64,000 nucleotides of DNA from Macrostomum lignano. Its lineage: Eukaryota. Each line of letters opens with the position of its first letter. Positions within the stretch are counted from its first letter, which is position 1. Below the pieces are notes generated by a model. It saw only the letters and a list, made by a program, of their open reading frames with translations, made no database searches and was not told the origin of the DNA. The position numbers and the translations under genes are program-made. Positions 2,828-59,407 of the stretch are shown here, piece after piece. Location of the stretch: NCBI GenBank assembly GCA_002269645.1, contig NIVC01001513.1, forward strand, positions 11,091 to 75,090, written 5' to 3'.

Positions 2828-33187
<30,360 letters not shown>

Positions 33188-33244
33188 TGATGGGAGCGGC
33201 CGGGTCAGTAGGGTGGCAACTGCCGACGGATGGGTGAGGTGTGA

Positions 33245-33905
33245 GGTCTGAGAGTGTGGGATTTGAGAGTGTGGTATTTGAGAGTGTGGGATTTGAGAGT
33301 GTGGGATTTGAGAGTGTGGGATTTGAGAGTGTGGGATTTGAGAGTGTGGGATTTGAGAGTGTGGGATTTGAGAGTGTGGGATTTGAGAGTGTGGGATTTG
33401 AGAGTGTGGGATTTGAGAGTGTGGGATTTGAGAGTGTGGGATTTGAGAGTGTGGGATTTGAGAGTGTGGGATTTGAGAGTGTGGGATTTGAGAGTGTGGG
33501 ATTTGAGAGTGTGGGATTTGAGAGTGTGGGATTTGAGAGTGTGGGATTTGAGGGTGTGGGATTTGAGAGTGTGGGATTTGAGAGTGTGGGATTTGAGAGT
33601 GTGGGATTTGAGAGTGTGGGATTTGAGAGTGTGGGATTTGAGAGTGTGGGATTTGAGAGTGTGGGATTTGAGAGTGTGGGATTTGAGAGTGTGGGATTTG
33701 AGAGTGTGGGATTTGAGAGTGTGGGATTTGAGAGTGTGGGATTTGAGAGTGTGGGATTTGAGAGTGTGGGATTTGAGAGTGTCGGATTCGAGAGTGAGGG
33801 ATTTGAGAGTGTCGGATTCGAGAGTGAGGGATTTGAGAGTGTGGAATTTGAGAGTTTGGGATTTGAGAGTGTGGGATTTGAGAATGTGGGATTTGAGTGT
33901 GGGAT
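33245..33905. repeat. 15-bp minisatellite GAGAGTGTGGGATTT
   Basis: About 44 units immediately upstream of the sif ATG. Confidence 0.96.
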
Positions 33906-34389
33906 TTATAAACATGAAAATTAAATTCTCTTGAATATAAGTGGACGAAAATCTCAGTTCGCTTGCTATGGTTTAAGAATGTTTTGTTAAATCTTGGCTT
34001 CCTGCAGCGGGCTCTGCGTGCACTTTTTAAAAGACAGTCCTTCGCCACTCAAGCATTTTGCAGTTTCCGACCGTCCTCTCTCTTTCTCTCCTCATGTTAG
34101 GCGATGAATGCCACTCTGAATGGGAACTTTTGCCGCCAGTTCTCCCTATCGTTTGTCGTTCCGCTCTCCTATGCAGCTGATCTCTCCCTTCCCGCCCTCC
34201 CGCTTCAGAGATCGATACACTTTTTTGCCTTGTGGGCGGGCCGCCGCGGTGCCTGCTGGCTGATATGGCAGTTTTTTCTGTGTCAGTCAGCCAAGCACGT
34301 TTTTTTTCAAACTGTTGCATGGATTTTGGCTGGCCAATTCGACACAGCAATCGTTTCTTGATTTTATACCGAAGTTTATTCCAGGCGGC

Positions 34390-35640
<1,251 letters not shown>

Positions 35641-40887: not shown

Positions 40888-41298
40888 CTAGTTGGCAGGA
40901 TCGAGCCGACTATGAGAGAGCAGAGTCCGGAGGCTTCTCCCCTTGGTGTAGGCGGGCAGCACCGGGGTCTCGCAGTGGCGTATCACCCTGTCCTTCACTT
41001 TGGCAGCCAGGGCGTCGGAGGTCGCACAGTGGGGCAGGATCAGCGGGATGGCCGGTTTGTGCAGTATGCCGGCAAGTTCGTTGGCGCCGTGTGGAACATG
41101 AGTCCTCAGGACCTCGATAAACTTGGCCTCCTGGCGCTGACGCCGCTCGTCAGCTCTGGGTCCTGTGCCATCGCGTGTCCAGATGCCGGTGAAGGCGAAG
41201 TCCGTCAGACTGTGGCCACCGCTGGTGAAGTGGCGCGCTACCGGAGTGTCACGGGTGTGCCGGATGTCACCGATGTGCGCCAGCATGCGACCACGGAT
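40888..41298 (-). mobile_element. Penelope-like element fragment (C-terminal half of GIY-YIG endonuclease plus linker-like segment)
   Basis: R..AHIGDIR...PVARHF...H...R...EAKFIEVLRTHVPHGAN matches the PLE GIY-YIG C-terminus. Cut off upstream by a 10-bp repeat array. Confidence 0.7.
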
Positions 41299-44042: not shown

Positions 44043-45221
44043 CAAAACGTACATAAGTGTTCTCAGAATTGATCTGAGAGTGGGACAGCGGAGCCAAATC
44101 ACTTGAATCGGGTGAACGAGTGGCTGCGTGTGTGCCGTGGCCGCGCATGCGCCTGCTTGAAATGTGATTGAAAGCCAGCCAAAGCCAAGTCTCTCTCTCT
44201 CTCCTCGGCTCCAACTGTCGGCCGGTCATTAGAATCGATTTAGCAAGAGTAGAGGAGGGCATGGCGAGGTTTGAGTTCTCAAATCCTCAGTTGGGGGGGG
44301 GCGCGTCTCAAGGATCTGGGGAATTCTCTCGCCAGGCCTTCCAAGTGCAGTGGGTTTGGAAACGAGGAAGGTAAAGGTGCAATCGCACTAGGAACTAAAT
44401 ATTCACCTCTGCAGTGATAATGATCACCAATAGTATTAAACAGCTGGCGATTGGAAAGCCAGGGCTCCTGTACACCATGCGTTGCGGTCAAAGGCAACGG
44501 CCTTCTTATTTACCTCCTCGCTAGTCAAGGACTCGTCTTATTACAAGTAAAATTTAGATCACAAAAAAGATATAACAGCTTTTATTCTGTTAGTAGTACT
44601 GTTAGTAGGCTAGTAGCGATTCTATGATATTTTTATTTACCTATTCTTAAAAAATAATGAATCAGCATGTACTATTGCAAAGTTGCGCGCACTAATTCAA
44701 AAAGTACAAAGCAATCAGTAATGCAAGTCAATTTAGTATTGACGTACCACAGGCAGAGACTCAAGCTTAAACATTTGGCTGACGGCAGCTGCAGCTCATT
44801 ATTATGCATGAAATGTTACAAGAACAGTCAGCATCCAGGCTTGCATTGCCTGCATACTTTGTTGCAGGCGTGCCACAGGAAAGCAAAGAAGGAGACCTGT
44901 TTAATTTAGAAGAATTCTGGCTTGCTTGGCTTAAACTCAAACTCAAACTCAGTACAGCTGTTAAGCACCCGCAAACGATGCAATAAATTACCGCCTCAGG
45001 TGGACTTAAGCGGGGGAGCGCTCTCTTTTTCTCTATTTCAGTTTGTTTCTCGAAGTTTCCATGGAAACTTGAGGCAGCCCCAAGACAATAGACTTTCCTA
45101 CTAAAGCAGAGTTTGACTGCATCGGGTCTGCGCCACTTCCCCAGTTTGTTGAGATTCTCAAGCTCACAGCCTCTCACTCAGTGCTGCCTTCTCAGTCCTA
45201 CTTACTGGACGGCCTTCCAAA

Positions 45222-46506
45222 ATGTCCTTATCGAGCATTGCCGTCATCGTGGCCATCTGGAGCTCTCGAGCTGCCGGTGAGACCTTCGTCTTCGACAAGA
45301 GGCCGGACCTGTGCTTCGCGGAGGCGGCCCCGGCTGCTGGCGACCAGCGCAAAGTGCTCGGAGTTGTTGACTCTCGAGTGTGCGCGGTTGAGTGCGCGGT
45401 CAACACCAGCGTGTGCTCCGTGTACCAATACCTGCCTGGCAACAAATCCTGCGTCCTTGGCAACAGCTGCGACCTGCTGCTGAAGTGGCAGAGCACTGGC
45501 GGGCCAGCGTGCGACACGCAGACGCTTCGAGATCGGGCAGCGTGCGGGACCACAGCATCATCTACTGTCTCGACTACAGCTACAACCCAAACAACAACCA
45601 CTGCACAAACCGCATTTCATGGTAAATTGAGCATGAGATCTTCCGATCTAAATGCCGGGTCATGGGTGCCATTAGCGAACACTGTATCAGATTATAGCAA
45701 TACAACACATGGAACTTCTTCCAGCTCCTCCGTCGGACTCGAGCAACCAAACTGGATCGGTGCAGACTTTCACTCCGCCGACCGACGGCTGCTATCGAAT
45801 CTCGGCTTGGGGCGCCAGAGGCGGCAAGTCATCCGCTAACGCGAACGGCGGCAGAGGCGCATTCAAGAGCGCCAATTTCATGCTGACCACGTCGCAAACT
45901 CTCACGCTTGTTGTTGGCAAGCCGGGAAACAGCGGCAGCAGCGGCGGAGGAGGCGGAGGAGGCGGCAGCTTTGTGTACACAACCGGCGACAACACGCTGC
46001 TGCTGGCGGCCGGTGGCGGAGGAGGCGGCGGCGCCGAGTCGTCCTCGTCGGTCGGCAGAAACGGAACAAGCAGCACCGGAGGCTCTTGCGGCACATCAGA
46101 CGAACAAGGCGGTGACGGAGACAGCAACGATAACTCTGGCGCGGGCGGAGCTGGCTGGAGCTCAGACGGAGCAGCTCGAGCCACTGGCAATGGCGGAGGC
46201 CACGGTGGAAGAGGCATCGGCGGCAGCTGGGCCGGCGGCAACGCGGGAACGGGCAGCAACGGCTTCGGCGGCTACGGCGGAGGCGGCGGAGGCGGCAACA
46301 ACGATGGTGACAAGGGAGGCGGCGGTGGAGGCGGCGGCTTCTCTGGCGGTTGTGGAGGATCCGGCGACAGCGATGACGGCTACGGAGGCAGCGGCGGCAG
46401 CTACGCGAGCTCATCCGGCAAGCAGGCCGCGGGAACGACAGGCGGCAACGGTGAAGTCTTCGGCAAGGTGAGCATCGCTCAGGTGGACGGCTCTCTGTGC
46501 CATTAA
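45222..46506 (+). CDS. Secreted PAN/apple + Thr stalk + ALK/LTK-type glycine-rich domain protein, copy 1 (exons 45222-45621, 45725-46506; 393 aa)
   Basis: The two overlapping ORFs in the track are joined by a 103-nt phase-1 GT-AG intron (45622-45724). Hydrophobic signal peptide, CAVEC...CSVYQY...C PAN pattern, then QTFTPPTDGCYRISAWGARGG...LVVGKPG...GGGGSFV...LLAAGGGGG. Confidence 0.88.
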
Positions 46507-47189
46507 CATGAGCACTCAGTCATTAGTTTGCTACTGTTTATAAATACAGGAAAATAAGGGGCTTGTGAATTGGATCAACTATTTGAAGGAGCGTCATTTG
46601 AATTAACGTTGGGTTGGAAGATGTTGAGTGACAAACCAGCAACTTTGCAATCGTACAATTAAGACTTCTTACTTTCTGAATATATTTTTGATTAAATATT
46701 TTTTCTTCACAAAGCCAATTCATTACGCGTATCGATTGACTTTCTCTTTTGTACTGCTCAGTTCTGAATTATGATTTATGCAGCCATGACCATATTAGCC
46801 GTAATCCACTGACCCATGGTAACAAGCTTGAGTGCTTTGTCACAAAAATAAAAAATTTGTTCTGGTACAATTTGATTTTTTCCGAATGTCTTCATAAAAA
46901 AGTTTCACTACTTACAGTAGGGTGACGTGTATTAGCAACTGCAAACTGGTTTTGTTGAACTTAAATAAATGGGCGAGTCATTCTGATGCAGTGGTTTCTC
47001 TTTAAATTCTCTAGCAAAAGGCAGCGTTCACCTATTCGAGTATATTTTATAAAGCAGTCTTTCTCTAATAAACTGAAATACGTTAATGCGAGCTATTTAC
47101 TCTCTATAGCAACGTTATGGCTCTGTGACTTCTTCACGCTTAAGTCAGGCTTTGGAAGGATCTAAAAGCTGTGCGATCAGTGCTAGGCA

Positions 47190-48165
47190 CATTGGAAGGG
47201 TACAGTGGAAGGTTACAGTTGGTTCGCAGAGTTGAAGGGCACAGTGGAAGGGTACAGTGGAATGTCACAGTGGAAGGGCACAGTGTGGAAGGCTACAGTG
47301 GAAGGGCACAGTGGAAGGGCACAGTGGAAGGGCACAGTGGAAGGGCACAGTGGAAGGGCACAGTGTGGAAGGGTACAGTGGAAGGGCACAGTGGAAGGGT
47401 ACAGTGGAAGGGTACAGTGGAAGGGCACAGTGTGGAAGGGTACAGTGGAAGGGCACAGTGTGGAAGGGTACAGTGGAAGGGCACAGTGGAAGGGTACAGT
47501 GGAAGGGTACAGTGGAAGGGTACAGTGGAAGGGTACAGTGGAAGGGTACAGTAGAAGGGTACAGTAGAAGGGTACAGTGGGTTCGCAGAGTTGAAGGGTA
47601 CAGTGGAAGGGTACAGTGGAAGGGTACAGTGGAAGGGTACAGTGGAAGGGTACAGTGGAAGGGTACAGTGGAAGGGTACAGTGGAAGGGTACAGTGGAAG
47701 GGTACAGTGGAAGGGTACAGTAGAAGGGTACAGTGGGTTCGCAGAGTTGAACGACACAGTGGAAGGGTACAGTGGAAGGGTACAGTGGAAGGGCACAGTG
47801 TGGAAGGGTACAGTGGAAAGGCACAGTGGAAGGGTACAGTGGAAGGGTACAGTGGAAGGGTACAGTAGAAGGGTACAGTGGGTTCGCAGAGTTGAACGAC
47901 ACAGTGGAAGGGTACAGTTGAAGGGCACAGTGGGTTCGCAGAGTTGAACGACACAGTGGAAGGGTACAGTGGAAGGGTACAGTGGAAGGGCACAGTGTGG
48001 AAGGGTACAGTGGAAGGGCACAGTGGAAGGGTACAGTGGAAGGGTATAGTGGAAGGGTACAGTAGAAGGGTACAGTGGGTTCGCAGAGTTGAACGACACA
48101 GTGGAAGGGTACAGTTGAAGGGCACAGTGGGTTCGCAGAGTTGAAGGGCAGAGTTGAAGGGCACA
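47190..48165. repeat. 13-bp minisatellite CAGTGGAAGGGTA with variant blocks
   Basis: Direct observation; lies in the spacer of the inverted duplication. Confidence 0.95.
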
Positions 48166-49328
48166 TTGAGTAATTCATCTCCACTTGAGAGCCGCGCGTG
48201 TCTCCGCTGCAAATATCCCGGCAATTTCATGAACCTGCTGTACGAATCACTGAACGACTTGCTTCCAGGCTTACCTGACGCCTTCTTCTTCTTGGCCGAG
48301 CTGCTCCATTGCGGCTAGCAGAGATTGTAGCCGACTTGGCTCTCCCTCGTCCCGCAGACTTTGTTGGATCGCCTGCTGTCTTGGCTGGCTCCTTGCTCAT
48401 TGCGTCCGGTTAGAGTCGCTGCAACGCCACTGTTATGGCTGAGACGGATCACTGGCTTATTGGTTCATGGCTGATAAACGCCAAAATGTGTTATCAAGCT
48501 CAACTTTAATTTTTTCTACGAGTGCTAGCATTTCATATGCGCATCGCATCTTTCAGCTACAAGCCGATGAAAATAAATGGTAGCAGTCCGTGCTGGCGAT
48601 TCAAGTCTGTGATCGAGCCAGAGCAAACATTATGTGGGAAAAAGCGCCCATCAGCTGGGATGTTCTACAAGTGTTTTAGTTAAGGTTTCTAAGCGAAACT
48701 CCCATGCCAGCAGTATCATAGTTTGAGGGATTGGGGGCCAGTGGCAGCTGATTGACTACAGAACTCGAATGATCTTTCCTTTAGAAAAAACCTTAAAGAA
48801 TAATCACTGCATCAGACTGACTCGCCCGTTTATTCCAGTTCAACAAAACCAGTTCAGAAATACGTGTCACCCTACTGTAAGTAGCAAAACTCGGATAGCT
48901 TTTTACATGAAAACGTTCAGAGAAAGGATCAAGTCTTTCAAGAAAAAAAGTTTAATTTTTCAGACAAAGCACTCAAGCTTGTTAACATGGGTCAGTGGAT
49001 TACGGCAAATATGGTCATGCCTGCATAAATCATAATTCACAACTGAACAGCACAAAACCAGCAGAGAAAGTCAAACAAAGCTTGGCTCGCTTTGTGAATA
49101 AACGAATTTTATATTCAATATTTAATTAGAAAGATCACCCTAGGTTGCAAGCAAAATATAATATAAATATTTAATCATAAATATTCAATCATATCATTTT
49201 GGATTAAATCATAAATATAATCAAAAATTGATAAAAAATGACGTTCCTTCAAATAGTTGATCCAATTCACAAGCCCCTTATTTTCCTGTATTTATAAACA
49301 GTAGCAAACTAATGACTGAGTGCTCATG

Positions 49329-50273
49329 TTAATGGCACAGAGAGCCGTCCACCTGAGCGATGCTCACCTTGCCGAAGACTTCACCGTTGCCGCCTGTCGT
49401 TCCCGCGGCCTGCTTGCCGGATGAGCTCGCGTAGCTGCCGCCGCTGCCTCCGTAGCCGTCATCGCTGTCGCCGGATCCTCCACAACCGCCAGAGAAGCCG
49501 CCGCCTCCACCGCCGCCTCCCTTGTCACCATCGTTGTTGCCGCCTCCTCCGCCTCCGCCAAAGCCGCCGAAGCCGTTGCTGCCCGTTCCCGCGTTGCCGC
49601 CGGCCCAGCTGCCGCCGATGCCTCTTCCACCGTGGCCTCCGCCATTGCCAGTGGCTCGAGCTGCTCCGTCTGAGCTCCAGCCAGCTCCGCCCGCGCCAGA
49701 GTTATCGTTGCTGTCTCCGTCACCGCCTTGTCCGTCGGATGTGCCGCAAGAGCCTCCGGTGCTGCTTGTTCCGTCCTTACCGACCGACGAGGAAGACTCG
49801 GCGCCGCCGCCTCCTCCGCCACCGGCCGCCAGCAGCAGCGTGTTGGGGCCGGTTGTGTACACAAAGCTGCCGCCTCCTCCGCCTCCGCCTCCTCCGCCGC
49901 TGCTGCCGCTGTTTCCCGGCTTGCCAACAACAAGCGTGAGAGTTTGCGACGTGGTCAGCATGAAATTGGCGCTCTTGAATGCGCCTCTGCCGCCGTTCGC
50001 GTTAGCGGATGACTTGCCGCATCTGGCGCCCCAAGCCGAGATTCGATAGCAGCCGTCGGTCGGCGGAGTGAAAGTCTGCACCGATCCAGTTTGGTTGCTC
50101 GAGTCCGACGGAGGAGCTGGAGGGAGTTCCGTATGTTGTATTGCTATAGTCTGATACAGTGCTCGCTAATGGCACCCATGACCCGGCATTTAGATCGGAA
50201 GATCTCATGCTCAATTTACCATGAAATGCGGTTTGTGCAGTGGTTGCTGTTTGGGTTGTAGTTGTAGCTGTCG
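49329..50273 (-). pseudogene. Copy 2 of the same gene, inverted; intact exon 2 (49329-50116), intron 50117-50219, only about 54 nt of exon 1
   Basis: Reverse complement of copy 1 exon 2, intron and 3' flank. Homology stops near 50273, so the signal peptide and PAN domain are absent. GARGG is changed to GARCG. Confidence 0.8.
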
Positions 50274-50514
50274 ACTGAATCCTTCGGGAACTTATGTCAA
50301 TAAAACTCTCTTATTTGAAGTAAATTCTTATAGAATGAACCACGTTAATGCGCAGACTCTCTATAGCTTTCAGCGATCACAAAAGTTGTAGCTGTGTGAC
50401 TTCATCATGCAATGGGTCGGTATGTGACAGTGTCAGGCTTTTGGGCTCCTCGCAACTGCCGGAATGCAGATTCCAGAAGTTCGCCATCTGCACATGGGAA
50501 TGCACGGTTGAGAA

Positions 50515-51595
50515 GGATCTCGAGCATGCAGTCTCCCATCTGTCAGATCTCGAGCATGCAGTCTCCTATCTGTCGGATCTCGAGCATGCAGTCTCCCATC
50601 TGTCGGATCTCGAGCATGTGAGCATGCAGTCTCCTATCTGTCGGATCTCGAGCATGCAGTCTCCCATCTGTCGGATCTCGAGCATGCAGTCTCCCATCTG
50701 TCAGATCTCGAGCATGTGAGCATGCAGTCTCCTATCTGTCGGATCTCGAGCATGCAGTCTCCCATCTGTCAGATCTCGAGCATGCAGTCTCCTATCTGTC
50801 GGATCTCGAGCATGCAGTCTCCTATCTGTCGGATCTCGAGCATGTGAGCATGCAGTCTCCCATCTGTCGGATCTCGAGCATGCAGTCTCCTATCTGTCGG
50901 ATCTCGAGCATGTGAGCATGCAGTCTCCTATCTGTCGGATCTCGAGCATGCAGTCTCCTATCTGTCGGATCTCGAGCATGTGAGCATGCAGTCTCCTATC
51001 TGTCGGATCTCGAGCATGCAGTCTCCCATCTGTCGGATCTCGAGCATGCAGTCTCCCATCTGTCAGATCTCGAGCATGTGAGCATGCAGTCTCCTATCTG
51101 TCGGATCTCGAGCATGCAGTCTCCCATCTGTCAGATCTCGAGCATGCAGTCTCCTATCTGTCGGATCTCGAGCATGTGAGCATGCAGTCTCCTATCTGTC
51201 GGATCTCGAGCATGTGAGCATGCAGTCTCCCATCTGTCGGATCTCGAGCATGTGAGCATGCAGTCTCCTATCTGTCGGATCTCGAGCATGCAGTCTCCTA
51301 TCTGTCGGATCTCGAGCATGTGAGCATGCAGTCTCCTATCTGTCGGATCTCGAGCATGTGAGCATGCAGTCTCCCATCTGTCGGATCTCGAGCATGCAGT
51401 CTCCCATCTGTCGGATCTCGAACATGTGAGCATGCAGTCTCCCATCTGTCGGATCTCGAACATGTGAGCATGTAGTCTCCCATCTGTCGGATCTCGAACA
51501 TGTGAGCATGCAGTCTCCCATCTGTCGGATCTCGAACATGTGAGCATGCAGTCTCCCATCTGTCGGATCTCGAGCATGCAGTCTTCCATCTGTCG
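50515..51595. repeat. 30/38-bp minisatellite GGATCTCGAGCATG(TGAGCATG)CAGTCTCCYATCTGTC
   Basis: Direct observation. Confidence 0.95.
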
Positions 51596-52875
51596 GTCTG
51601 AGAGCCCAAGCGCAACATATGCGGCACGAGACCGAAGAGGTAGCAACATCAAGGCCGCCTGTCTGCCACCGTCAGCACCGTATATGCACTATAGAGCAGT
51701 TTCTGCGTTAGAGTCAAAGAAAGCGCTACCCTGTTAAATAGTTAAAGACATGTAAAGTCATGTTGAAGACATCTACATGTAAATGCAGCTCAGTTCAAAG
51801 CTACTTCGGCGCTGCCATCACAGGAGCCCAATATTTGCGTAATCACACGACTCGTTCACAAGCTGCTGTATCTTTGTACATCCTATGTGTGATTTCATGG
51901 CAGCGTGAACGAGCTATTGAGTCACATCACTGACGTAACAAGCAACAACAAAAGTGAAGAATATTACAGAGGCGAGGGAGATATTTTTAAGTGGTGTCCA
52001 ATCGAAATTCTCTGTGCCAGTATCATCAGTGCTATTGGCAGCTCATTGACTACCAAAATGGTCTCTGACAAGGTCAATTCACTAATAATTTTGTTTTTCT
52101 GGCTTTTAGAGGGCTTTTATATAACTTCCCGACGGATTCAGTCGATTCTTTGCCTGAAATCTCTCTTGCCTTAAATGCTTTGTCGCCCGTAGTGCCTTCA
52201 GTATGGTTCTGTCAGCAAGCCTAAAACTAGAAAGAAAATATGCACCACCCCCCAACACTGATGGCGCGCCAGGCATACCATGGGTCTCATTTAACATCAG
52301 CTTAAAATGGAAGAGCTGAAATATCGACCGCTAATGGATAGCCTTCCCTCAAAAGAGAAGTTCTTTGGGTAACGACGCTAAGTGCCTTCACGAATAGAGA
52401 TTACTATAGAAAGTTTGCCAAGTCGTTTGTTGCAGAGCACCCATCCATTCTTAAGACTCGTCTCTCAGTAGACCGTGATAAGCCCCCCATTGGTAGAAAT
52501 TTTTGTGGCACAGACTTTAACAAAAACTGAGTCTTTTTGCGTTTTCTAACATTTACAGCTTTTATCTCCCCATCAGGAGTTATCCCCTCCCATTATCGCC
52601 TCCCATTTCAAGCTACGCTCGTACGCTACTGTGGCCTCTCGTTTCCCACTCTCGCTCCCCTCCTCTCTCACTCTCTCACATTTTCTCTCTGTCAGTTTGT
52701 TTCTCAAAGTTTCCATGGAAACATTAGGCAGGCCCCAAGACAATAGACTTTCCTACTAAAGCAGAGTTTGACTGCATCGGGTCTGCGCTACTTCCCCAGT
52801 TTTTGAGATTCTCAAGCTCACAGCCTCTCACTCAGTGCTGCCTTCTCATTCCTACTTACTGGACGGCCTTCCAAA

Positions 52876-54454
52876 ATGTCCTTATCGAGCATTGCCGTCA
52901 TCGTGGCCATCTGGAGCTCTCGAGCTGCCGGTGAGACCTTCGTCTTCGACAAGAGGCCGGACCTGTGCTTCGCGGAGGCGGCCCCGGCTGCTGGCGACCA
53001 GCGCAAAGTGCTCGGAGTTGTTGACTCTCGAGTGTGCGCGGTTGAGTGCGCGGTCAACACCAGTTTGTGCTCCGTCTACCAATACCTGCCTGGCAACAAA
53101 TCCTGCGTCCTTGGCAACAGCTGCGACCTGCTGCTGAAGTGGCAGAGCACCGGCGGGCCGGCGTGCGACACGCAGACGCTTCGAGATCGGGCAGCGTGCG
53201 CGTCCACGAGCGACACTGCAGCCACAACTGCAGCCTCGACTGGAGCAGTTGCTACTACAACTACAACTACAACACCAACTACAACTACAACTACAACATC
53301 AACTACAACTACAACACCAACTACAACTACAACACCAACTACAACTACAACACCAACTACAACTACAACACCAACTACAACTACAACATCAACTACAACT
53401 ACAACACCAACTACAACTACAACACCAACTACAACTACTACTACAACTACAACACCAACTACAACTACAACACCAACTACAACTACAACACCAACTACAA
53501 CTACAACTACGACTACAACTACAACCCAAACAACAACCACTGCACAAACCGCATTTCATGGTAAGTTGAGCATGAGATCTTCCGATCTAAATGCCGGGTC
53601 ATGGGTGCCATTAGCGAGCACTGTATCAGACTATAGCAATACAACATACGGAACTCCCTCCAGCTCCTCCGTCGGACTCGAGCAACCAAACTGGATCGGT
53701 GCAGACTTTCACTCCGCCGACCGACGGCTGCTATCGAATCTCGGCTTGGGGCGCCAGAGGCGGCAAGTCATCCGCTAACGCGAACGGCGGCAGAGGCGCA
53801 TTCAAGAGCGCCAATTTCATGCTGACCACGTCGCAAGCTCTCACGCTTGTTGTTGGCAAGCCGGGAAACAGCGGCAGCAGCGGCGGAGGAGGCGGAGGAG
53901 GCGGAGGAGGCGGCAGCTTTGTGTACACAACCGGCCCCAACACGCTGCTGCTGGCGGCCGGTGGCGGAGGAGGCGGCGGCGCCGAGTCTTCCTCGTCGGT
54001 CGGTAAGGACGGAACAAGCAGCACCGGAGGCTCTTGCGACACATCCGACGGACAAGGCGGTGACGGAGACAGCAACGATAACTCTGGCGCGGGCGGAGCT
54101 GGCTGGAGCTCAGACGGAGCAGCTCGAGCCACTGGCAATGGCGGAGGCCACGGTGGAAGAGGCATCGGCGGCAGCTGGGCCGGCGGCAACGCGGGAACCG
54201 GCAGCAACGGCTTCGGCGGCTTTGGCGGAGGCGGAGGAGGCGGCAACAACGATGGTGACAATGGAGGCGGCGGCGGAGGAGGCGGCTTCTCTGGCGGTTG
54301 TGGAGGATCCGGCGACAGCGATGACGGCTACGGAGGCAGCGGCGGCAGCTACGCGAGCTCATCCGGCAAGCAGGCCGCGGGAACGACAGGCGGCAACGGT
54401 GAAGTCTTCGGCAAGGTGAGCATCGCTCAGGTGGACGGCTCTCTGTGCAGTTAA
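52876..54454 (+). CDS. Copy 3 (exons 52876-53560, 53664-54454; 491 aa, longest Thr stalk)
   Basis: Same structure as copy 1; GTAAGT donor at 53561, CCTCCAG acceptor ending 53663, intron 103 nt. Confidence 0.88.
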
Positions 54455-54639
54455 CATGAGCGCGCACTGATACTCGTCATTTTTTATTGTTACAAACACT
54501 GGAAAACAATCAGCTTGCATACTTGCGCGACGGCTCTGCGCAAGAGGTGCACGGTGATGGGCGGCACTTCTCGAAAAAGTTCCCCTGCCCTATCCCGCGA
54601 CCAAAGCGTGGTTAGTTACATCAGCCTAATTAAATATCT

Positions 54640-54885
54640 TACTACACTACACCTGTCCACGGCTGTTCAGTGCAAGGACTGGGGGGTCGCCACACACAGC
54701 CTCAATTACCCCAGCTAATGCTGGCACCCATTTTACAGCTGGGTGAACTGAAGCAATGCAGAGTTAAGTGTCTTGCTCAAAGACACGAATTGTTCCGAGT
54801 GGGTCAGGAATCGAACCCCCGACCTTTTAGTTGTGAGTCCAACGCTCCAACCTATAACCTAAGGCTACAACCCAACCTACCTGTC
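54640..54885 (-). mobile_element. tRNA-derived SINE with CORE-like domain (ends approximate)
   Basis: On the minus strand a tRNA-like head with B-box GGTTCGATTCC (54807-54817) is followed by TTGAGCAAGACACTTAAC...CAGCTGTAAAATGGG, resembling the MIR/CORE consensus. Confidence 0.65.
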
Positions 54886-54982
54886 CTTTATTACGTACAG
54901 CACATTAGCGCTTATCCATTGAGAATTCCAAAGTAGTCATGGTCCAAAAATTGAGTATTGCGTATTAAATAAAATTCTGACA

Positions 54983-57296
54983 ACAACAAACAACAAAATA
55001 CGCTGTCAGGATGGCAAAAGTCAGCATCACAGGGCGCGCTTCATGGCTTGGGCGCGAACAAAGGCCGCACCACAGGCAGTGTCCGGGGCGCCGGCGTCAG
55101 CCAGCAGACAGTCGACATAACGCCGAGTTCGCGCTTGTCCTCGCCGGTAGGGTGCCTGCAGCGTGAGCAGCAGCACCTCCTGCACCGGCTGTGGGCAGTA
55201 CGACTCGGCGCGGATGAGATGGCCTGCGAGCTGGAGTCGCCGACGGCGCAGTAGATCGCTTGGACGTGGCAGGCCAGCGCGGCGATAGAGTGCCGCGTTG
55301 GTGACTCGCTCGACGCCGATGTTGAAGGCGACGCGCAGCAGGCCAGCGTGCGCCGCATCAACTTGCTGTTCGAGTGAGTCCGTCAGCGTCCAGGTCTCGG
55401 CGTTGTACAGCAGGACGGTCTCGATTACCGCCTGGAACAGCGCCGCCCTCTGGCGGTCTGGTAGGGCCTCGGACTGCAGGACTGCCCTCACAGAACGAAA
55501 GGCAGCCCAGGCAAGCCCGCGGCGGCGTCGCAGGTCCTCGCGAGCGTCTGGAACCAGACCGCCGAGGTAGACGAACTGCTGACATCGCGGGAGTTCGGTC
55601 GCCTGCCCGTCAGTGCCTCGGCAGAATATTACAGTCTCGATGTCGTCCGGCACGCAGAGCACAACGGTCTTCTGCGTGTTGACCACCAGGCCGACGCTCG
55701 CCGCAACGGCAACTAGCGTGTCCAGCTGCCGTTGGGTGCCCTCGACGGTCGAGGACCGCAAGGCGAGGTCGTCGGCGTAGCCAAGCACGCTGAGCCGTTT
55801 CTCCGGTTGACGTCGACCCACGCGTCGCCGCAGCAGAAAACCGTCGTCGTCGGTAGGAAGAGCAATCCGCAGCACCCAGTCAAGCACCAGGACGAACAGG
55901 AACGGCGCCAGCGTATCTCCCTGAAGCACTCCGGAGGATGTCTCAAAGGAGTCCGATAGGCCATCCGGTGTTGTCATAGCAGCTGTCGTATCACGGTACA
56001 TTGCCATGATGGCGAAGATCAGCTGCTTAGGCACGTTGTACGCGCGGAGCACCATTGGAAGCACGGCTCTGACAACCGAGTCGAATGCCTTCTTGAAATC
56101 AATAAAGATTAGAATCAGGATCGACTGGCGAATCCGCGCCTCCTCGATGACTCGGCGAAGAGCCAGGATCTGCGCCACTGTGCCGCGATGGGCCGGAACC
56201 CGTTCTGCTCTGGGCGCAGGTACGGATCCAGCACGGGCTGCAACCGCGAAAGCAGCATCCGGTTGAACAGCTTCGCTGCACAGGACTGAAGGCAGATGCC
56301 TCGATGGTCTTCAAGCCTAGTGGTGCCCGGCTTCTTTGGAACAGCGACGATGTGCGCCGATGTGTGCCGTGGTCCATTCGTTGGGCGCCGCCTCACCGAA
56401 GAGCACGCGGTTCATCACTCTGGCGACCTCAGCGGCCACACAGGGGATGCGCAGCGCCTCGATGGGCACCTCGTCCGGACCCAGCGCTTTCCCGCCCGGT
56501 GACTGCTGGGCGAGCTTGACAACGTCGGCTGCGTTGACTGGGGCTACGCTGAAACTCTTCTCTGCCGGCAACGGCGTCTCCGGCGGCAGCGTCAGACTGT
56601 CTGGCAGCGGGGTGGCGGCGCGTTAACGATGGCGGCGAAGAACTCGCGCAGCTCGTTCCTGCGCTCGTCCGGAGTGTCACCAGCCAGGTTCAGCGGATTC
56701 GCCGCTTTCGCCCTGTCAGAGCGTTGATGGCGGACCAGGCCACGCGCCTCTGGCATCGGGCCCAGCGGCAGAGACAGCCAGAATGGCGTCATCGACAGCC
56801 GCTTGTTGGCGCTGCAGGTAGACAGCCGCCAGAGCTGCCTCTGCCTCGCGGGTTGGTCGCCTGCTCAAGCGGAGCCTCTCCAGATCTTTCCTCGCTGCCT
56901 GAATCGCAGGGTCGTCCTGCCAGACCGGCTGCCCACGTTGAGCCGGTTGCATCATCGGGACTACTTGCTCCGCGGTGGTTCTGACTGCAGCGCACACTTC
57001 CGCATACTCGGCACTTCCACGCTTGTCGCCCAGCGCGGTGTTAAAGGCGCTAGCAAAGCGACGCTGCGTATCGGTGGCTCTGAGCGCGCGGTAGTAGCAC
57101 CGCGGTGGCCGCTTCGGCGGACGGTAGAGCGGATCGCAAAGGTTGAGGTCGCAGATGAGGAGCCGGTGATCGGACCGCAGAGCCAGCGGCGTGATGGTGC
57201 GGCAGTTGACGGCGCGACGACGCTCACGGAAACGCACGAGCACGTGGTCGAGCTGTGCTTGTCTCCGGGTTGCGTACCTGCCACGCGCAGGAACGC
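54983..57296 (-). mobile_element. 5'-truncated, frameshifted RTE-type non-LTR retrotransposon (end of APE endonuclease plus reverse transcriptase)
   Basis: LDHVLV...SDHRLL (APE end); FIDFKKAFDSV, GVLQGDTLAPFLF, GYADDLAL, YLG (RT); VLLYNAETWTLT. (TTG)n-like 3' tail; direct repeat AATTCTGACA at 54973-54982 and 57297-57306. Confidence 0.9.
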
Positions 57297-57954
57297 AATT
57301 CTGACAGCTTGCTTTATATAGCTTCATCTTACCACTTCTAGTAGGCTAGTTGTAAAAATCCTCCAAGAAATGTACAAAGGCGACAAAAAAAGTAGAATCC
57401 GTGAATAGTAACCACGTGCGATGGCCGCATAAACGAGCTCTTAACATGGAGCTGGAAGTATTAAAATCACTTCTCCATAGTTGATAAGGAGCACTGATTA
57501 AAAAATTCGCTATTTAACGCAATAATTCTTTGAAATACGTGCGATGGTCAAAATGTGCGCTTGTACCCCAAACTCGGTACTTTAGCGGCATCGATCAACT
57601 TATCCTCATGAGTAGAGATTTCTAAAGAGAACCATTTTTCCACGTCGTTTTTGCGGAGGACCCAACCCATTCCCACGACTGGTCTTTATTTTCTCCCCTC
57701 TCGCTCTACGTCCCCACCTTTCCCCGCTCTCCCTCCCCTCCTTTCTCGCTCTCTCACATGTTTCCCTCTGTCAGTTTGTTTCTCAAAGTTTCAATGGAAA
57801 CATTAGCAGGCCCCAAGACAATAGACTTTCCTACTAAAGCAGAGTTTGACTGCATCGGGTCTGCGCTACTTCCCCAGTTTGTTGAGATTCTCAAGCTCAC
57901 AGCCTCTCACTCAGTGCTGCCTTCTCATTCCTACTTACTGGACGGCCTTCCAAA

Positions 57955-59407
57955 ATGTCTTTATCGAGCATTGCCGTCATCGTGGCCATCTGGAGCTCTC
58001 GAGCTGCCGGTGAGACCTTCGTCTTCGACAAGAGGCCGGACCTGTGCTTCGCGGAGGCGGACCCGGCTGCTGGCCACCAGCGCAAAGTGCTCGGAGTTGT
58101 TGACTCTCGAGTGTGCGCGGTTGAGTGCGCGGTCAACACCAGCATGTGCTCCGTCTACCAATACCTGCCTGGCAACAAATCCTGCGTCCTTGGCAACAGC
58201 TGCGACCTGCTGCTGAAGTGGCAGAGCACTGGCGGGCCAGCGTGCGACACGCAGACGCTTCGAGATCGGGCAGCGTGCGCGTCCACGAGCGACACTGCAG
58301 CCACAACTGCAGCCTCGACTGGAGCAGTTGCTACTACAACTACAACACCAACTACAACTACAACTACAACTACTACTACAACTACAACACCAACTACAAC
58401 TACAACTACAACTACAACACCAACTACAACTACAATACCAACTACAACTACAACACCAACTACAACTACAACCCAAACAACAACCACTGCACAAACCGCA
58501 TTTCATGGTAAGTTGAGCATGAGATCTTCCGATCTAAATGCCGGGTCATGGGTGCCATTAGCGAACACTGTATCAGATTATAGCAATACAACACATGGAA
58601 CTTCTTCCAGCTCCTCCGTCGGACTCGAGCAACCAAACTGGATCGGTGCAGACTTTCACTCCGCCGACCGACGGCTGCTATCAAATCTCGGCTTGGGGCG
58701 CCAGAGGCGGCAAGTCATCCGCTAACGCGAACGGCGGCAGAGGCGCATTCAAGAGCGCCAATTTCATGCTGACCACGTCGCAAACTCTCACGCTTGTTGT
58801 TGGCAAGCCGGGAAACAGCGGCAGCAGCGGTGGAGGAGGCGGAGGAGGAGGCAGCTTTGTGTACACAACCGGCCCCAACACGCTGCTGCTGGCGGCCGGT
58901 GGCGGAGGAGGCGGCGGCGCCGAGTCTTCCTCGTCGATCGGTAAGGACGGAACAAGCAGCACCGGAGGCTCTTGCGGCACATCCGACGGACAAGGCGGTG
59001 ACGGAGACAGCAACGATAACTCTGGCGCGGGCGGAGCTGGCTGGAGCTCAGATGGAACAGCTCAAGCCACTGGCAATGGCGGAGGCCACGGTGGAAGAGG
59101 CATCGGCGGCAGCTGGGCCGGCGGCAACGCGGGAACGGGCAGCAACGGCTTCGGCGGCTACGGCGGAGGTGGCGGAGGCGGCAACAACGATGGAGTCCCT
59201 CCTGACGGCCGCGGTGGAGGCGGCGGTGGAGGAGGCGGCTTCTCTGGCGGTTGCGGAGGATCCGGCGACAGCGATGACGGCTACGGAGGCGGCGGTGGCA
59301 GCTACGCGAGCTCATCCGGCAAGCAGGCCACGGGAGCGACAGGCGGCAACGGTGAAGTCTTCGGCAAGGTGAACATCGCTCAGGTGGTCGCCTCTCTGTG
59401 CAGTTAA
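57955..59407 (+). CDS. Copy 4 (exons 57955-58507, 58611-59407; 449 aa)
   Basis: Same structure as copy 1; GTAAGT donor at 58508, acceptor ending 58610, intron 103 nt; VPPDGR insertion in the Gly-rich region. Confidence 0.88.

What the first reader, a model, noticed from the sequence alone, without database searches (positions are those of the whole stretch)
45222..59407. Tandem family of secreted proteins: PAN/apple domain, mucin stalk, and a free-standing ALK/LTK-type glycine-rich domain
Seen: after splicing, each full copy has a signal peptide, a Cys-rich PAN-like domain, a Thr stalk and a roughly 260-aa domain with no transmembrane segment. That domain follows, in order, the motif series of the ALK/LTK ectodomain: QTFTPPTDGCYRISAWGARGG (ALK [21 protein letters not shown]), ANFMLTTSQTLTLVVGKPG (GIFNLEKDDMLYILVGQQG), GGGGSFV...LLLAAGGGG (GGGGATYV...LIIAAGGGG), [37 protein letters not shown]...C (GEVNIKHYLNC). 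Established: in ALK/LTK this TNF-like/polyglycine-II module (Pfam ALK_LTK_GRD/Gly_rich) is the cytokine-binding unit, and related domains occur in bacteria and phage; PAN domains bind proteins or glycans. Inference: a possibly undescribed amplified family of soluble two-headed binders. Candidate roles are ALK-ligand decoys, mucus/adhesive or immune-recognition proteins, or PGII-bundle structural proteins. This is the best candidate for a novel system in the window.
Basis: partly seen in the sequence, partly recalled or inferred. Interest (0 to 1): 0.8.

Follow-up and report, generated by a model that had tools for sequence, protein, structure and literature searches.

The report
Flatworm secreted PAN–mucin–glycine-rich-domain gene cluster
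A small cluster of recently duplicated flatworm genes encodes secreted proteins that join a PAN-like domain and a sugar-coated threonine stalk to the same glycine-rich fold that the human ALK/LTK receptors use to bind their ligands; this fold is widespread but has never been studied outside those receptors, so the locus is a real but fairly ordinary new member of that family.

Summary
Window 45,0–59,4 kb carries three intact two-exon genes (393, 491 and 449 aa) plus one inverted, 5'-truncated copy. The copies are 94–99% identical, and each has a conserved 103-nt GT..AG intron.

Each intact protein has four parts:
- an N-terminal hydrophobic leader;
- an 8-Cys PAN-like domain (marginal support);
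- a Thr-rich stalk of variable length, encoded by a minisatellite;
- a C-terminal ~260-aa glycine-rich domain, followed directly by a stop conserved in all four copies (no TM segment, EGF or kinase).

The glycine-rich domain is a true PF12810 ALK_LTK_GRD member. Pfam scores 37 bits against a cut-off of 24.5. phmmer to LTK 7nx0 gives E=5e-11. The top 21 Foldseek PDB hits of the AlphaFold model are all ALK/LTK TG domains.

It is not a new kind of thing. A profile search finds about 22,750 protein clusters with this domain in bacteria, phages, giant viruses, fungi and animals. Reef-coral proteins already annotated in NCBI have PAN_1 + GRD. The flatworm domain scores higher against these non-kinase forms than against ALK/LTK, so a role as an ALK-ligand decoy is unlikely.

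Most likely these are secreted, O-glycosylated, two-headed binding glycoproteins (lectin/agglutinin or mucus/matrix cross-linker). That function is inferred, not shown. Verdict: new member of a known, uncharacterised family; moderate to low interest.

The parts
45021..45221 (+). copy 1: conserved 5' flank (promoter/5'UTR candidate)
   Evidence: 91-94% identical to the equivalent ~200 bp upstream of c3 and c4; homology stops further upstream
45222..45621 (+). copy 1 exon 1: leader peptide, PAN-like 8-Cys domain, short (22 aa) S/T stalk
   Evidence: ORF and splice model; PAN_1 22.0 bits vs cut-off 21.4; hydrophobic leader
45622..45724 (+). copy 1 intron, 103 nt, GTAAA...CCAG, phase 1
45725..46506 (+). 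copy 1 exon 2: ALK_LTK_GRD (TNF-like + glycine-rich) domain, stop codon included
49329..50116 (-). copy 2 exon 2: intact GRD reading frame with G->C in the WGARGG motif
50117..50219 (-). copy 2 intron (103 nt, 99% identical to the c3 intron)
50220..50267 (-). copy 2 remnant of exon 1 (end of the Thr stalk only); homology ends here, no ATG, leader or PAN: truncated copy
52642..52875 (+). copy 3: conserved 5' flank
52876..53560 (+). copy 3 exon 1: leader, PAN-like domain, 117-aa Thr/Pro stalk
53254..53537 (+). 18-nt minisatellite (ACTACAACACCAACTACA, ~16 copies) encoding the TTTTTP stalk of copy 3
   Evidence: Tandem Repeats Finder
53561..53663 (+). copy 3 intron, 103 nt, GTAAGT...CCAG
53664..54454 (+). 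copy 3 exon 2: GRD, stop included
57719..57954 (+). copy 4: conserved 5' flank
57955..58507 (+). copy 4 exon 1: leader, PAN-like domain, 73-aa Thr stalk (minisatellite 58333-58472)
58508..58610 (+). copy 4 intron, 103 nt (99% identical to the c1 intron)
58611..59407 (+). copy 4 exon 2: GRD with a 5-residue insertion (column alignment; the stretch reads VPPDGR), stop included

Best explanation
This is a young, gene-converting cluster in the genome of a Macrostomum-like free-living flatworm. It holds three intact two-exon genes and one inverted 5'-truncated copy. Each intact gene encodes a secreted protein with four parts: a cleavable leader, a PAN/apple-like disulphide-rich domain, a Thr/Pro-rich mucin-type stalk and a C-terminal PF12810 domain. 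The stalk length is set by an unstable 18-nt minisatellite (22, 117 and 73 aa). The C-terminal domain is the TNF-like beta-sandwich plus glycine-rich subdomain known from the ALK/LTK ectodomain. Shown here: the gene structure, the copy number, the domain identity of the GRD, and the absence of TM, EGF and kinase parts. Inferred: the proteins are exported and the stalk is heavily O-glycosylated and extended. The two terminal modules would then act as two separate binding heads, with the PAN domain binding glycan or protein and the GRD serving as a rigid binding platform. The GRD plays that part in ALK/LTK (shown there); its pairings and annotations in bacterial, phage and coral proteins suggest a similar part. 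The most likely role is an extracellular bridging or agglutinating glycoprotein of mucus, gland secretion or innate recognition. It is probably not a component or decoy of ALK signalling.
For: Gene models, and splice sites conserved in all four copies. Purifying selection on coding parts (pN/pS 0.08-0.57), with mosaic identity between copies (introns pair c1 with c4 and c2 with c3, while the GRD exons group differently), which indicates gene conversion. GRD identity: Pfam ALK_LTK_GRD 37.1 and 35.6 bits against a cut-off of 24.5 on the non-low-complexity N-terminal part. phmmer to LTK 7nx0 gives E=4.8e-11, and its first stretch (i-Evalue 1.1e-5) has bias of only 0.4. The AlphaFold model has pLDDT of about 58-97 (10-residue block means, most >=70) across the GRD. 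The top 21 Foldseek PDB hits are all LTK/ALK TG domains, E 1e-10 to 5e-5, TM about 0.4-0.56 normalised by target; the next hit has E=0.33. About 57 columns are invariant across flatworm, coral and fungal GRDs. Secretion and no anchor: the only hydrophobic segment is N-terminal, and the stop is conserved. GRD as a general extracellular module: it is joined to EGF, C-type lectin, HYR, PKD/Ig-like and T9SS sorting domains, and it matches phage proteins whose database names are virion-structural or tail-collar proteins. PAN + GRD recurs in corals with both domains above Pfam cut-offs. Host attribution: the interspersed RT ORF is 72-92% identical to Macrostomum lignano RTs.
Against: No transcript, protein or expression evidence was available, so splicing, secretion, O-glycosylation and any binding activity are inferred. 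The leader lacks a charged n-region, and no SignalP-type predictor was run. PAN support is marginal: 22.0 bits against a cut-off of 21.4; FXI apple domain E=0.53; hhalign to coral PAN E=0.089; model pLDDT 54; Foldseek hits to the HGF N-domain and plasminogen PAN at E of about 1. The TM-score to ALK/LTK is moderate (about 0.4-0.56, rmsd 6-8 A), and the honeycomb packing of PGII helices could not be inspected. No ligand is known for any non-kinase GRD, so 'binding head' rests on analogy. pN/pS of 0.3-0.57 in the GRD is rather high and could reflect relaxed constraint.
Confidence: 0.6

Rival explanations
1. Soluble ALK-ligand decoy or modulator: the free GRD captures the flatworm's ALK ligand and tunes ALK signalling.
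For: The GRD is homologous to the ligand-binding TG domain of ALK/LTK. Soluble ectodomain decoys are common for other receptors (general knowledge).
Against: The domain scores higher against non-kinase GRDs of fungi, flatworm and corals (60-95 bits) than against LTK/ALK (46 and about 29 bits); the two sets come from different searches. The EGF-like module that follows the TG domain in ALK/LTK is absent. The family has about 22,750 clusters, many of them in organisms without ALK such as bacteria, phages and fungi. From memory only, and not tested here: the acidic ALK residues that contact ALKAL arginines do not appear to be conserved in the C-terminal strand.
Confidence: 0.05
2. Structural or material protein: the glycine-rich part forms polyglycine-II bundles that build a fibre, adhesive, eggshell or cuticle-like material rather than binding a specific ligand.
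For: 34-35% Gly in the GRD. An even number of Cys, including one two residues from the C-terminus, could cross-link chains. Tandem amplification is typical of highly expressed secretory-product genes (general knowledge). [quoted passage not shown]
Against: The domain is a compact globular fold with conserved non-glycine motifs and beta-strands, not a repetitive fibre. Those automatic names are composition-driven. The PAN domain and mucin stalk fit a soluble glycoprotein better.
Confidence: 0.15
3. Decaying or non-functional duplicates: the array is a set of recent segmental duplicates, some or all of them not expressed.
For: Copy 2 is truncated and inverted and has lost a near-invariant Gly. 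The region is full of minisatellites and holds a degraded non-LTR retrotransposon. No matching protein exists in any database searched.
Against: Three copies keep complete frames of 393-491 codons, their start and stop codons and both splice sites, with pN/pS below 1 in every comparison.
Confidence: 0.1
4. Contaminant, or a recent horizontal transfer from bacteria or phage.
For: Many family members are bacterial or viral.
Against: The genes have a spliceosomal intron, a eukaryote-type leader and a metazoan-type PAN-like domain. They are embedded among host repeats and a Macrostomum-type RT. The closest named relatives are eukaryotic.
Confidence: 0.02

Closest known systems
TG (TNF-like + glycine-rich) supradomain of the receptor tyrosine kinases ALK and LTK (PDB 7nx0, 7nx1, 7nwz, 7n00, 7lrz; Pfam PF12810 ALK_LTK_GRD)
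   Same: Same Pfam family and same order of motifs. Sequence similarity is significant (E=4.8e-11 to LTK). The predicted fold retrieves only these structures at E<1e-4. Both are extracellular.
   Different: No EGF-like module, transmembrane helix or kinase. Identity is only 21-28% over the structural alignment, and TM is about 0.4-0.56. The N-terminal partners are a PAN-like domain and a mucin stalk instead of MAM/LDLa/heparin-binding regions. Ligand unknown.
Scleractinian coral PAN_1-(EGF)-GRD proteins (P0047 Porites harrisoni ABFA07_017308; P0118 Pocillopora verrucosa 'putative lysozyme-like protein'; P0037; GRD-only P0078 Acropora millepora)
   Same: N-terminal PAN domain and C-terminal GRD that ends the protein; P0118 and P0037 also begin with a hydrophobic leader. 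GRDs are 35-39% identical, with about 57 invariant columns.
   Different: The corals have no Thr-rich mucin stalk; they have a Cys-containing linker or calcium-binding EGF domains instead. They carry an extra ~20-residue insert in the TNF-like part. The PAN domains are barely alignable (hhalign E=0.089). The function of the coral proteins is also unknown.
Macrostomum lignano UniProt A0A1I8I3R0 (P0003, auto-named 'receptor protein-tyrosine kinase')
   Same: Same (or sister) animal lineage; GRD 44% identical over the aligned part; Cys-containing N-terminal region.
   Different: Fragmentary model. Its N-terminal region is not recognised as PAN. No Thr stalk. It is a distant paralogue, not the same gene.
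Bacterial secreted GRD proteins (Bacteroidota T9SS substrates with HYR/PKD/Ig-like domains; Bacillus cereus 'glycine-rich protein' P0055), fungal ones (Kwoniella P0001; Drechmeria coniospora, PMC4859500)
   Same: Free-standing or modular extracellular PF12810 domains. Kwoniella P0001 is the best-scoring hit of all (95 bits, 41% identity).
   Different: Different partner domains and secretion signals, often many GRDs per protein (up to 11). The one paper found that mentions them states 'no hint of a function'.
Phage and giant-virus glycine-rich virion and tail-fibre proteins (BFVD hits; PGII-bundle adhesins such as Salmonella phage S16 gp38, PMC13243192)
   Same: Predicted fold similarity at E down to 5e-13. 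Glycine-helix bundles are used as rigid supports at receptor-binding tips (PMC13243192).
   Different: Viral structural context. S16 gp38 itself was not among the PDB hits, so that resemblance is one of principle, not demonstrated homology.

Membership tests
Pfam PF12810 ALK_LTK_GRD (TG supradomain) | Match to the family HMM above the curated gathering score | tested here: met
   Residues 1-75 and 7-125 of the mature exon-2 product score 37.1 and 35.6 bits (cut-off 24.5; E 4.5e-9 and 1.3e-8). The whole domain returns nothing. I attribute this to HMMER's composition filter, because the homologues do carry PF12810.
Pfam PF12810 ALK_LTK_GRD (TG supradomain) | Significant sequence similarity to solved ALK/LTK TG domains, outside glycine runs | tested here: met
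   LTK 7nx0 E=4.8e-11. Stretch 7-76 has i-Evalue 1.1e-5 with bias 0.4. ALK entries score E of about 1e-5.
Pfam PF12810 ALK_LTK_GRD (TG supradomain) | TNF-like beta-sandwich plus glycine-rich subdomain fold | tested here: met
   AlphaFold2 model, GRD block-mean pLDDT about 58-97. Foldseek PDB ranks 1-21 are all LTK/ALK, E 1e-10 to 5e-5, probability 1.00, TM (target) 0.38-0.56; rank 22 has E=0.33.
Pfam PF12810 ALK_LTK_GRD (TG supradomain) | Hexagonally packed polyglycine-II helices | tested here: inconclusive
   Model coordinates could not be inspected. DSSP shows the glycine-rich part as neither helix nor strand, which is compatible with this feature but does not prove it. At least six Gly runs are conserved in register with homologues.
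ALK/LTK receptor tyrosine kinases | Transmembrane helix and cytoplasmic tyrosine-kinase domain | tested here: not met
   The stop codon lies about 10 residues after the last GRD strand in all four copies. There is no hydrophobic segment after the leader, and homology between copies ends within 7-100 bp after the stop.
ALK/LTK receptor tyrosine kinases | Membrane-proximal EGF-like domain after the TG domain | tested here: not met
   The protein ends at ...GKVSIAQVDGSLCH/S.
ALK/LTK receptor tyrosine kinases | Binding of ALKAL/Jeb/HEN-1-type ligands | not testable with these tools
   Needs binding assays. Only indirect evidence is available: bit scores favour non-kinase GRDs.
PAN/apple domain (Pfam PF00024 PAN_1) | HMM match above the gathering score | tested here: met
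   22.0 bits against a cut-off of 21.4, E=1.5e-4, residues 42-79, which covers only the core. This passes by a very small margin.
PAN/apple domain (Pfam PF00024 PAN_1) | Beta-sheet / central helix fold with conserved core disulphides | tested here: inconclusive
   Isolated-domain model has pLDDT 54, with strand-helix-strand-strand order. The best Foldseek hits are PAN modules (HGF N-domain; plasminogen at probability 0.80, rmsd 1.5 A over 42 columns), but E is about 1. FXI apple 4 gives E=0.53. The core C-x3-C...C...C aligns with coral PAN.
Mucin-type PTS (Pro/Thr/Ser) domain | Long tandem-repeat stretch dominated by Thr/Ser/Pro | tested here: met
   Stalks of 117 aa (89% S+T+P), 73 aa (81%) and 22 aa (68%), encoded by 18-nt and 6-nt minisatellites.
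Mucin-type PTS (Pro/Thr/Ser) domain | Dense O-glycosylation | not testable with these tools
   Needs glycoproteomics or lectin blots.
Secreted PAN + GRD proteins as annotated in corals | N-terminal PAN and C-terminal GRD in one polypeptide without a TM segment | tested here: met
   Whether this reflects common descent or independent domain shuffling was not resolved.

The most novel reading that the evidence does not exclude
These PAN-mucin-GRD genes are a lineage-specific, fast-evolving family of flatworm secretory recognition or adhesion proteins. The GRD head would bind a defined microbial, mating-partner or matrix ligand, and the stalk-length polymorphism would tune its reach. Because Macrostomum is open to RNAi and in situ work, the family would give the first experimental handle on what the very large non-kinase GRD superfamily does. 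It could also show what the ALK/LTK ligand-binding module did before it was recruited to a kinase.
Probability: 0.15. Interest if true: 0.6.

Novelty: new member of a known kind. Interest (0 to 1): 0.3.

Why it matters
The ALK/LTK ligand-binding fold was described structurally only in 2021 (release dates of the PDB entries) and is usually discussed as a peculiarity of those two receptors. The searches here show that it is a large and promiscuous extracellular module: about 22,750 clusters at 50% identity, combined with EGF, C-type lectin, PAN, HYR and T9SS domains, and present in phage virion proteins. Its function outside ALK/LTK is essentially unstudied; the single paper found that cites PF12810 says 'no hint of a function'. 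A compact, tandemly amplified, secreted version in a laboratory-tractable flatworm lineage could be a convenient entry point. The locus itself adds a new member and a new stalk variant. It does not add a new principle.

Tried and rejected
(1) Pfam scan of the whole GRD gave nothing; splitting off the N-terminal part recovered PF12810.

(2) I tried to locate the window's own proteins or close orthologues. The full-protein search found nothing above 47% identity. An exact look-up of eight ORF products found none in the collection.

(3) The genomic context of coral P0047 showed a single called gene and no tandem array within +/-10 kb among the called genes. I did not translate the flanks further.

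(4) Literature searches for free-standing GRD proteins, PF12810/Gly_rich, and Macrostomum glycine-rich or PAN secreted proteins gave only the Drechmeria remark, a PPII-bundle methods paper and an abbreviation list. The 2021 ALK structure paper PMC8639797 is not held.

(5) The PAN-domain structure prediction gave a low-confidence model. Its input alignment A4 mis-aligned the C-terminal third against GRD sequence, so the model is weak evidence.

(6) Pfam on neighbouring ORFs recognised only the RT.

(7) Rejected readings: recent bacterial HGT or contamination (intron, host repeats), and receptor kinase (conserved stop, no TM).

Full report
**1. What is in the sequence**

The window is eukaryotic and unusually rich in mini- and microsatellites: 59 tandem-repeat rows scored at least 200. 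tblastn with the two domains finds four copies of the glycine-rich exon and three of the Cys-rich exon, all between 45.2 and 59.4 kb, and none elsewhere.

DNA comparison shows that the repeated unit is tight. It runs from about 200-235 bp upstream of the ATG to a few bases past the stop, or about 100 bp past the stop for c1 and c2. The DNA between the copies is unrelated. It consists of:
- minisatellites at 47189-48130 and 50522-51596;
- a degraded non-LTR retrotransposon between c3 and c4, with an RVT_1 reading frame at 55027-56178 on the minus strand.

**2. Gene models**

In every copy the first reading frame ends at ...GCATTTCATG|GTAAG/A. The second frame is entered after YYCCAG|CTCCTCCG, exactly 103 nt later and in phase 1. 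Splicing gives uninterrupted frames:

| Copy | Exon 1 | Exon 2 | Protein |
|---|---|---|---|
| c1 | 45222-45621 | 45725-46506 | 393 aa |
| c3 | 52876-53560 | 53664-54454 | 491 aa |
| c4 | 57955-58507 | 58611-59407 | 449 aa |

Copy c2 lies on the minus strand. It keeps exon 2 (50116-49329), the intron, and only about 48 nt of exon 1. Upstream of that the homology stops, and the frame has stop codons and no ATG. Its product would also carry Cys in place of a Gly that at least 90% of 79 aligned family members keep. I regard c2 as a truncated fragment.

Coding identity between copies is 96-99%, with pN/pS of 0.08-0.49 for the PAN part and 0.31-0.57 for the GRD. This is consistent with functional but fast-evolving genes. 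The introns pair c1 with c4 and c2 with c3 (99% identical), and the 3' flank pairs c1 with c2, while the GRD exons group differently. This mosaic is the signature of gene conversion. No transcript evidence was available, so the splice is inferred.

**3. The protein**

Residues 1-19 (MSLSSIAVIVAIWSSRAAG) form the only hydrophobic segment, with a Kyte-Doolittle 19-residue maximum of 1.44. This is leader-like rather than TM-like. The rest of the protein is built as follows:
- About 90 residues with eight Cys.
- A stalk of 22, 117 or 73 residues that is 68-89% Ser/Thr/Pro. It is encoded by an 18-nt (TTTTTP-type) or 6-nt minisatellite.
- A C-terminal domain of 260-265 residues, 34-35% Gly, with four Cys. 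It ends about 10 residues after its last beta-strand.

**4. The glycine-rich domain is a genuine ALK/LTK-type TG domain**

- phmmer against all PDB sequences puts LTK first (7nx0, E=4.8e-11) and ALK next (about 1e-5). The first aligned stretch (residues 7-76; QTFTPPTDGCYRISAWGARGG... against VQLWRVPGPGQYLISAYGAAGG...) has almost no composition bias.
- Pfam reports nothing for the whole domain. It does report ALK_LTK_GRD at 37.1 and 35.6 bits (cut-off 24.5) for the N-terminal 75 and 119 residues. The negative result is therefore a low-complexity filter artefact.
- An AlphaFold2 model built on 79 aligned homologues has block-mean pLDDT of about 58-97 (most at least 70) over the GRD.
- Foldseek against the PDB returns LTK and ALK TG-domain entries, including the invertebrate ALK GRD 7lir, as ranks 1-21 (E 1e-10 to 5e-5; TM 0.38-0.56 on the target). 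Nothing else falls below E=0.3.
- I could not inspect coordinates, so the packing of the polyglycine-II helices remains unverified.

**5. The PAN-like domain**

PAN_1 passes its gathering score only just (22.0 against 21.4 bits). Three other weak results point the same way:
- factor XI apple 4 is the second-ranked PDB sequence hit (E=0.53), and the only one of the four weak hits with a related fold;
- hhalign to coral PAN domains aligns the C-x3-C...C...C core (E=0.089);
- a low-confidence isolated-domain model (pLDDT 54) has strand-helix-strand-strand order, and its best Foldseek hits are the PAN modules of HGF and plasminogen (E about 1).

'PAN-like' is reasonable but not secure.

**6. How widespread the module is**

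A profile of the alignment, searched against 1.84 billion representative proteins, finds 22,750 representatives at E<=1e-3, 7,248 at E<=1e-10 and 1,259 at E<=1e-30. Many are giant proteins with up to 11 matched stretches.

Partner domains in a sample are EGF, C-type lectin, HYR, PKD/Ig-like and the T9SS sorting domain. BFVD gives 40 viral matches at E<=1e-3, including proteins named virion structural or tail-collar proteins of cyanophages, and giant-virus 'glycine-rich domain' proteins.

Named eukaryotic relatives include Kwoniella (best hit, 95 bits), Macrostomum lignano A0A1I8I3R0, and several corals. Two coral proteins (P0047, P0118) carry PAN_1 and ALK_LTK_GRD, both above cut-off. The 'PAN + free GRD' architecture therefore already exists in public annotations.

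In the literature held here, only one paper cites PF12810. It concerns three Drechmeria proteins and says 'no hint of a function can be garnered'.

**7. Source organism**

The RT reading frame between c3 and c4 has its best named matches in Macrostomum lignano (72-92% identity). The nearest animal GRD is also from M. lignano. No identical or near-identical protein is on record. The window is therefore from M. lignano sequence that is not represented in these protein sets, or from a close relative. This attribution is an inference.

**8. Mechanism**

Shown: the architecture, and the membership of the GRD in PF12810. Inferred: everything about function.

In every context where the module can be placed, it is extracellular, and its partners or annotations suggest recognition:
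- cytokine capture in ALK/LTK (PDB titles);
- pairing with HYR, PKD/Ig-like and T9SS sorting domains in bacterial surface proteins;
- phage proteins named virion-structural or tail-collar proteins;
- lectin-, EGF- and PAN-linked proteins in cnidarians.

Only the first of these is an established function; the others are indirect. A PAN module at one end, a rigid glycine-lattice module at the other, and an extended O-glycosylated spacer of variable length between them suggest a secreted bivalent bridging glycoprotein. It could be a lectin or agglutinin, or a mucus or matrix cross-linker.

I put about 0.85 on 'secreted, non-kinase PF12810 glycoprotein family' and about 0.4 on the bridging/agglutinin mechanism specifically. 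The composite confidence is 0.6.

The ALK-decoy idea is disfavoured for three reasons. The domain scores higher against non-kinase GRDs than against ALK/LTK, although those scores come from different searches. It lacks the EGF module. The family also thrives in organisms without ALK.

**9. Verdict**

The domain call is right. The claim of novelty is overstated. This is a new member, with a mucin-stalk variation and a tandem, gene-converting arrangement, of a very large, already catalogued and functionally unexplored family. Interest is 0.3.

Noticed in passing
window 54900-57330, minus strand: Degraded non-LTR retrotransposon between copies 3 and 4. It has an RVT_1 reading frame at 55027-56178 (63 bits) and a further 203-aa ORF at 56716-57327 in another frame with no Pfam match. 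The best named relatives are Macrostomum lignano RTs (72-92% identity), which is the basis for the host attribution.
   Followed up: partly
whole window, e.g. 6161-7815, 18647-19588, 23627-24478, 24973-26089, 30313-31954, 34390-35632: Extreme density of mini- and microsatellites, with 59 Tandem Repeats Finder rows scoring at least 200 and periods of 4-351 nt. They generate many long spurious ORFs on both strands. The Thr stalks of the genes are themselves part of this repeat instability.
   Followed up: partly
window 2828-3889, 8997-9533, 13864-14307, 22600-24537, 32831-34048, all minus strand: A series of long poly-Gln/Pro-rich ORFs on the minus strand, possibly exons of one or more host genes. 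The last one ends in a segment that looked EVH1/WH1-like to me by eye. Pfam found nothing in the 2828-3889 ORF or in the EVH1-like segment of 32831-34048; the other three were not scanned.
   Followed up: partly
window 40888-41286, minus strand: A 132-aa ORF (…VARHFTSGGHSLTDFAFTGIW…) that resembles, from memory, the GIY-YIG-type nuclease motif found in some retroelements. There was no Pfam hit at E<=0.01.
   Followed up: partly
window 46507-46610 and 49225-49328: Only c1 and c2 share about 100 bp of 3' flank, including ATAAAT/AAATAA polyadenylation-like motifs. c3 and c4 diverge within about 15 bp of the stop. The copies therefore have different 3' UTRs, which points to patchwork conversion or recombination rather than simple tandem duplication.
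   Followed up: partly
protein set (e.g. P0247, P0250, P0266, P0326): Giant proteins of 3,000-5,000 aa, of unknown origin, with 8-11 matched GRD stretches each. These multi-GRD arrays appear never to have been described.
   Followed up: no
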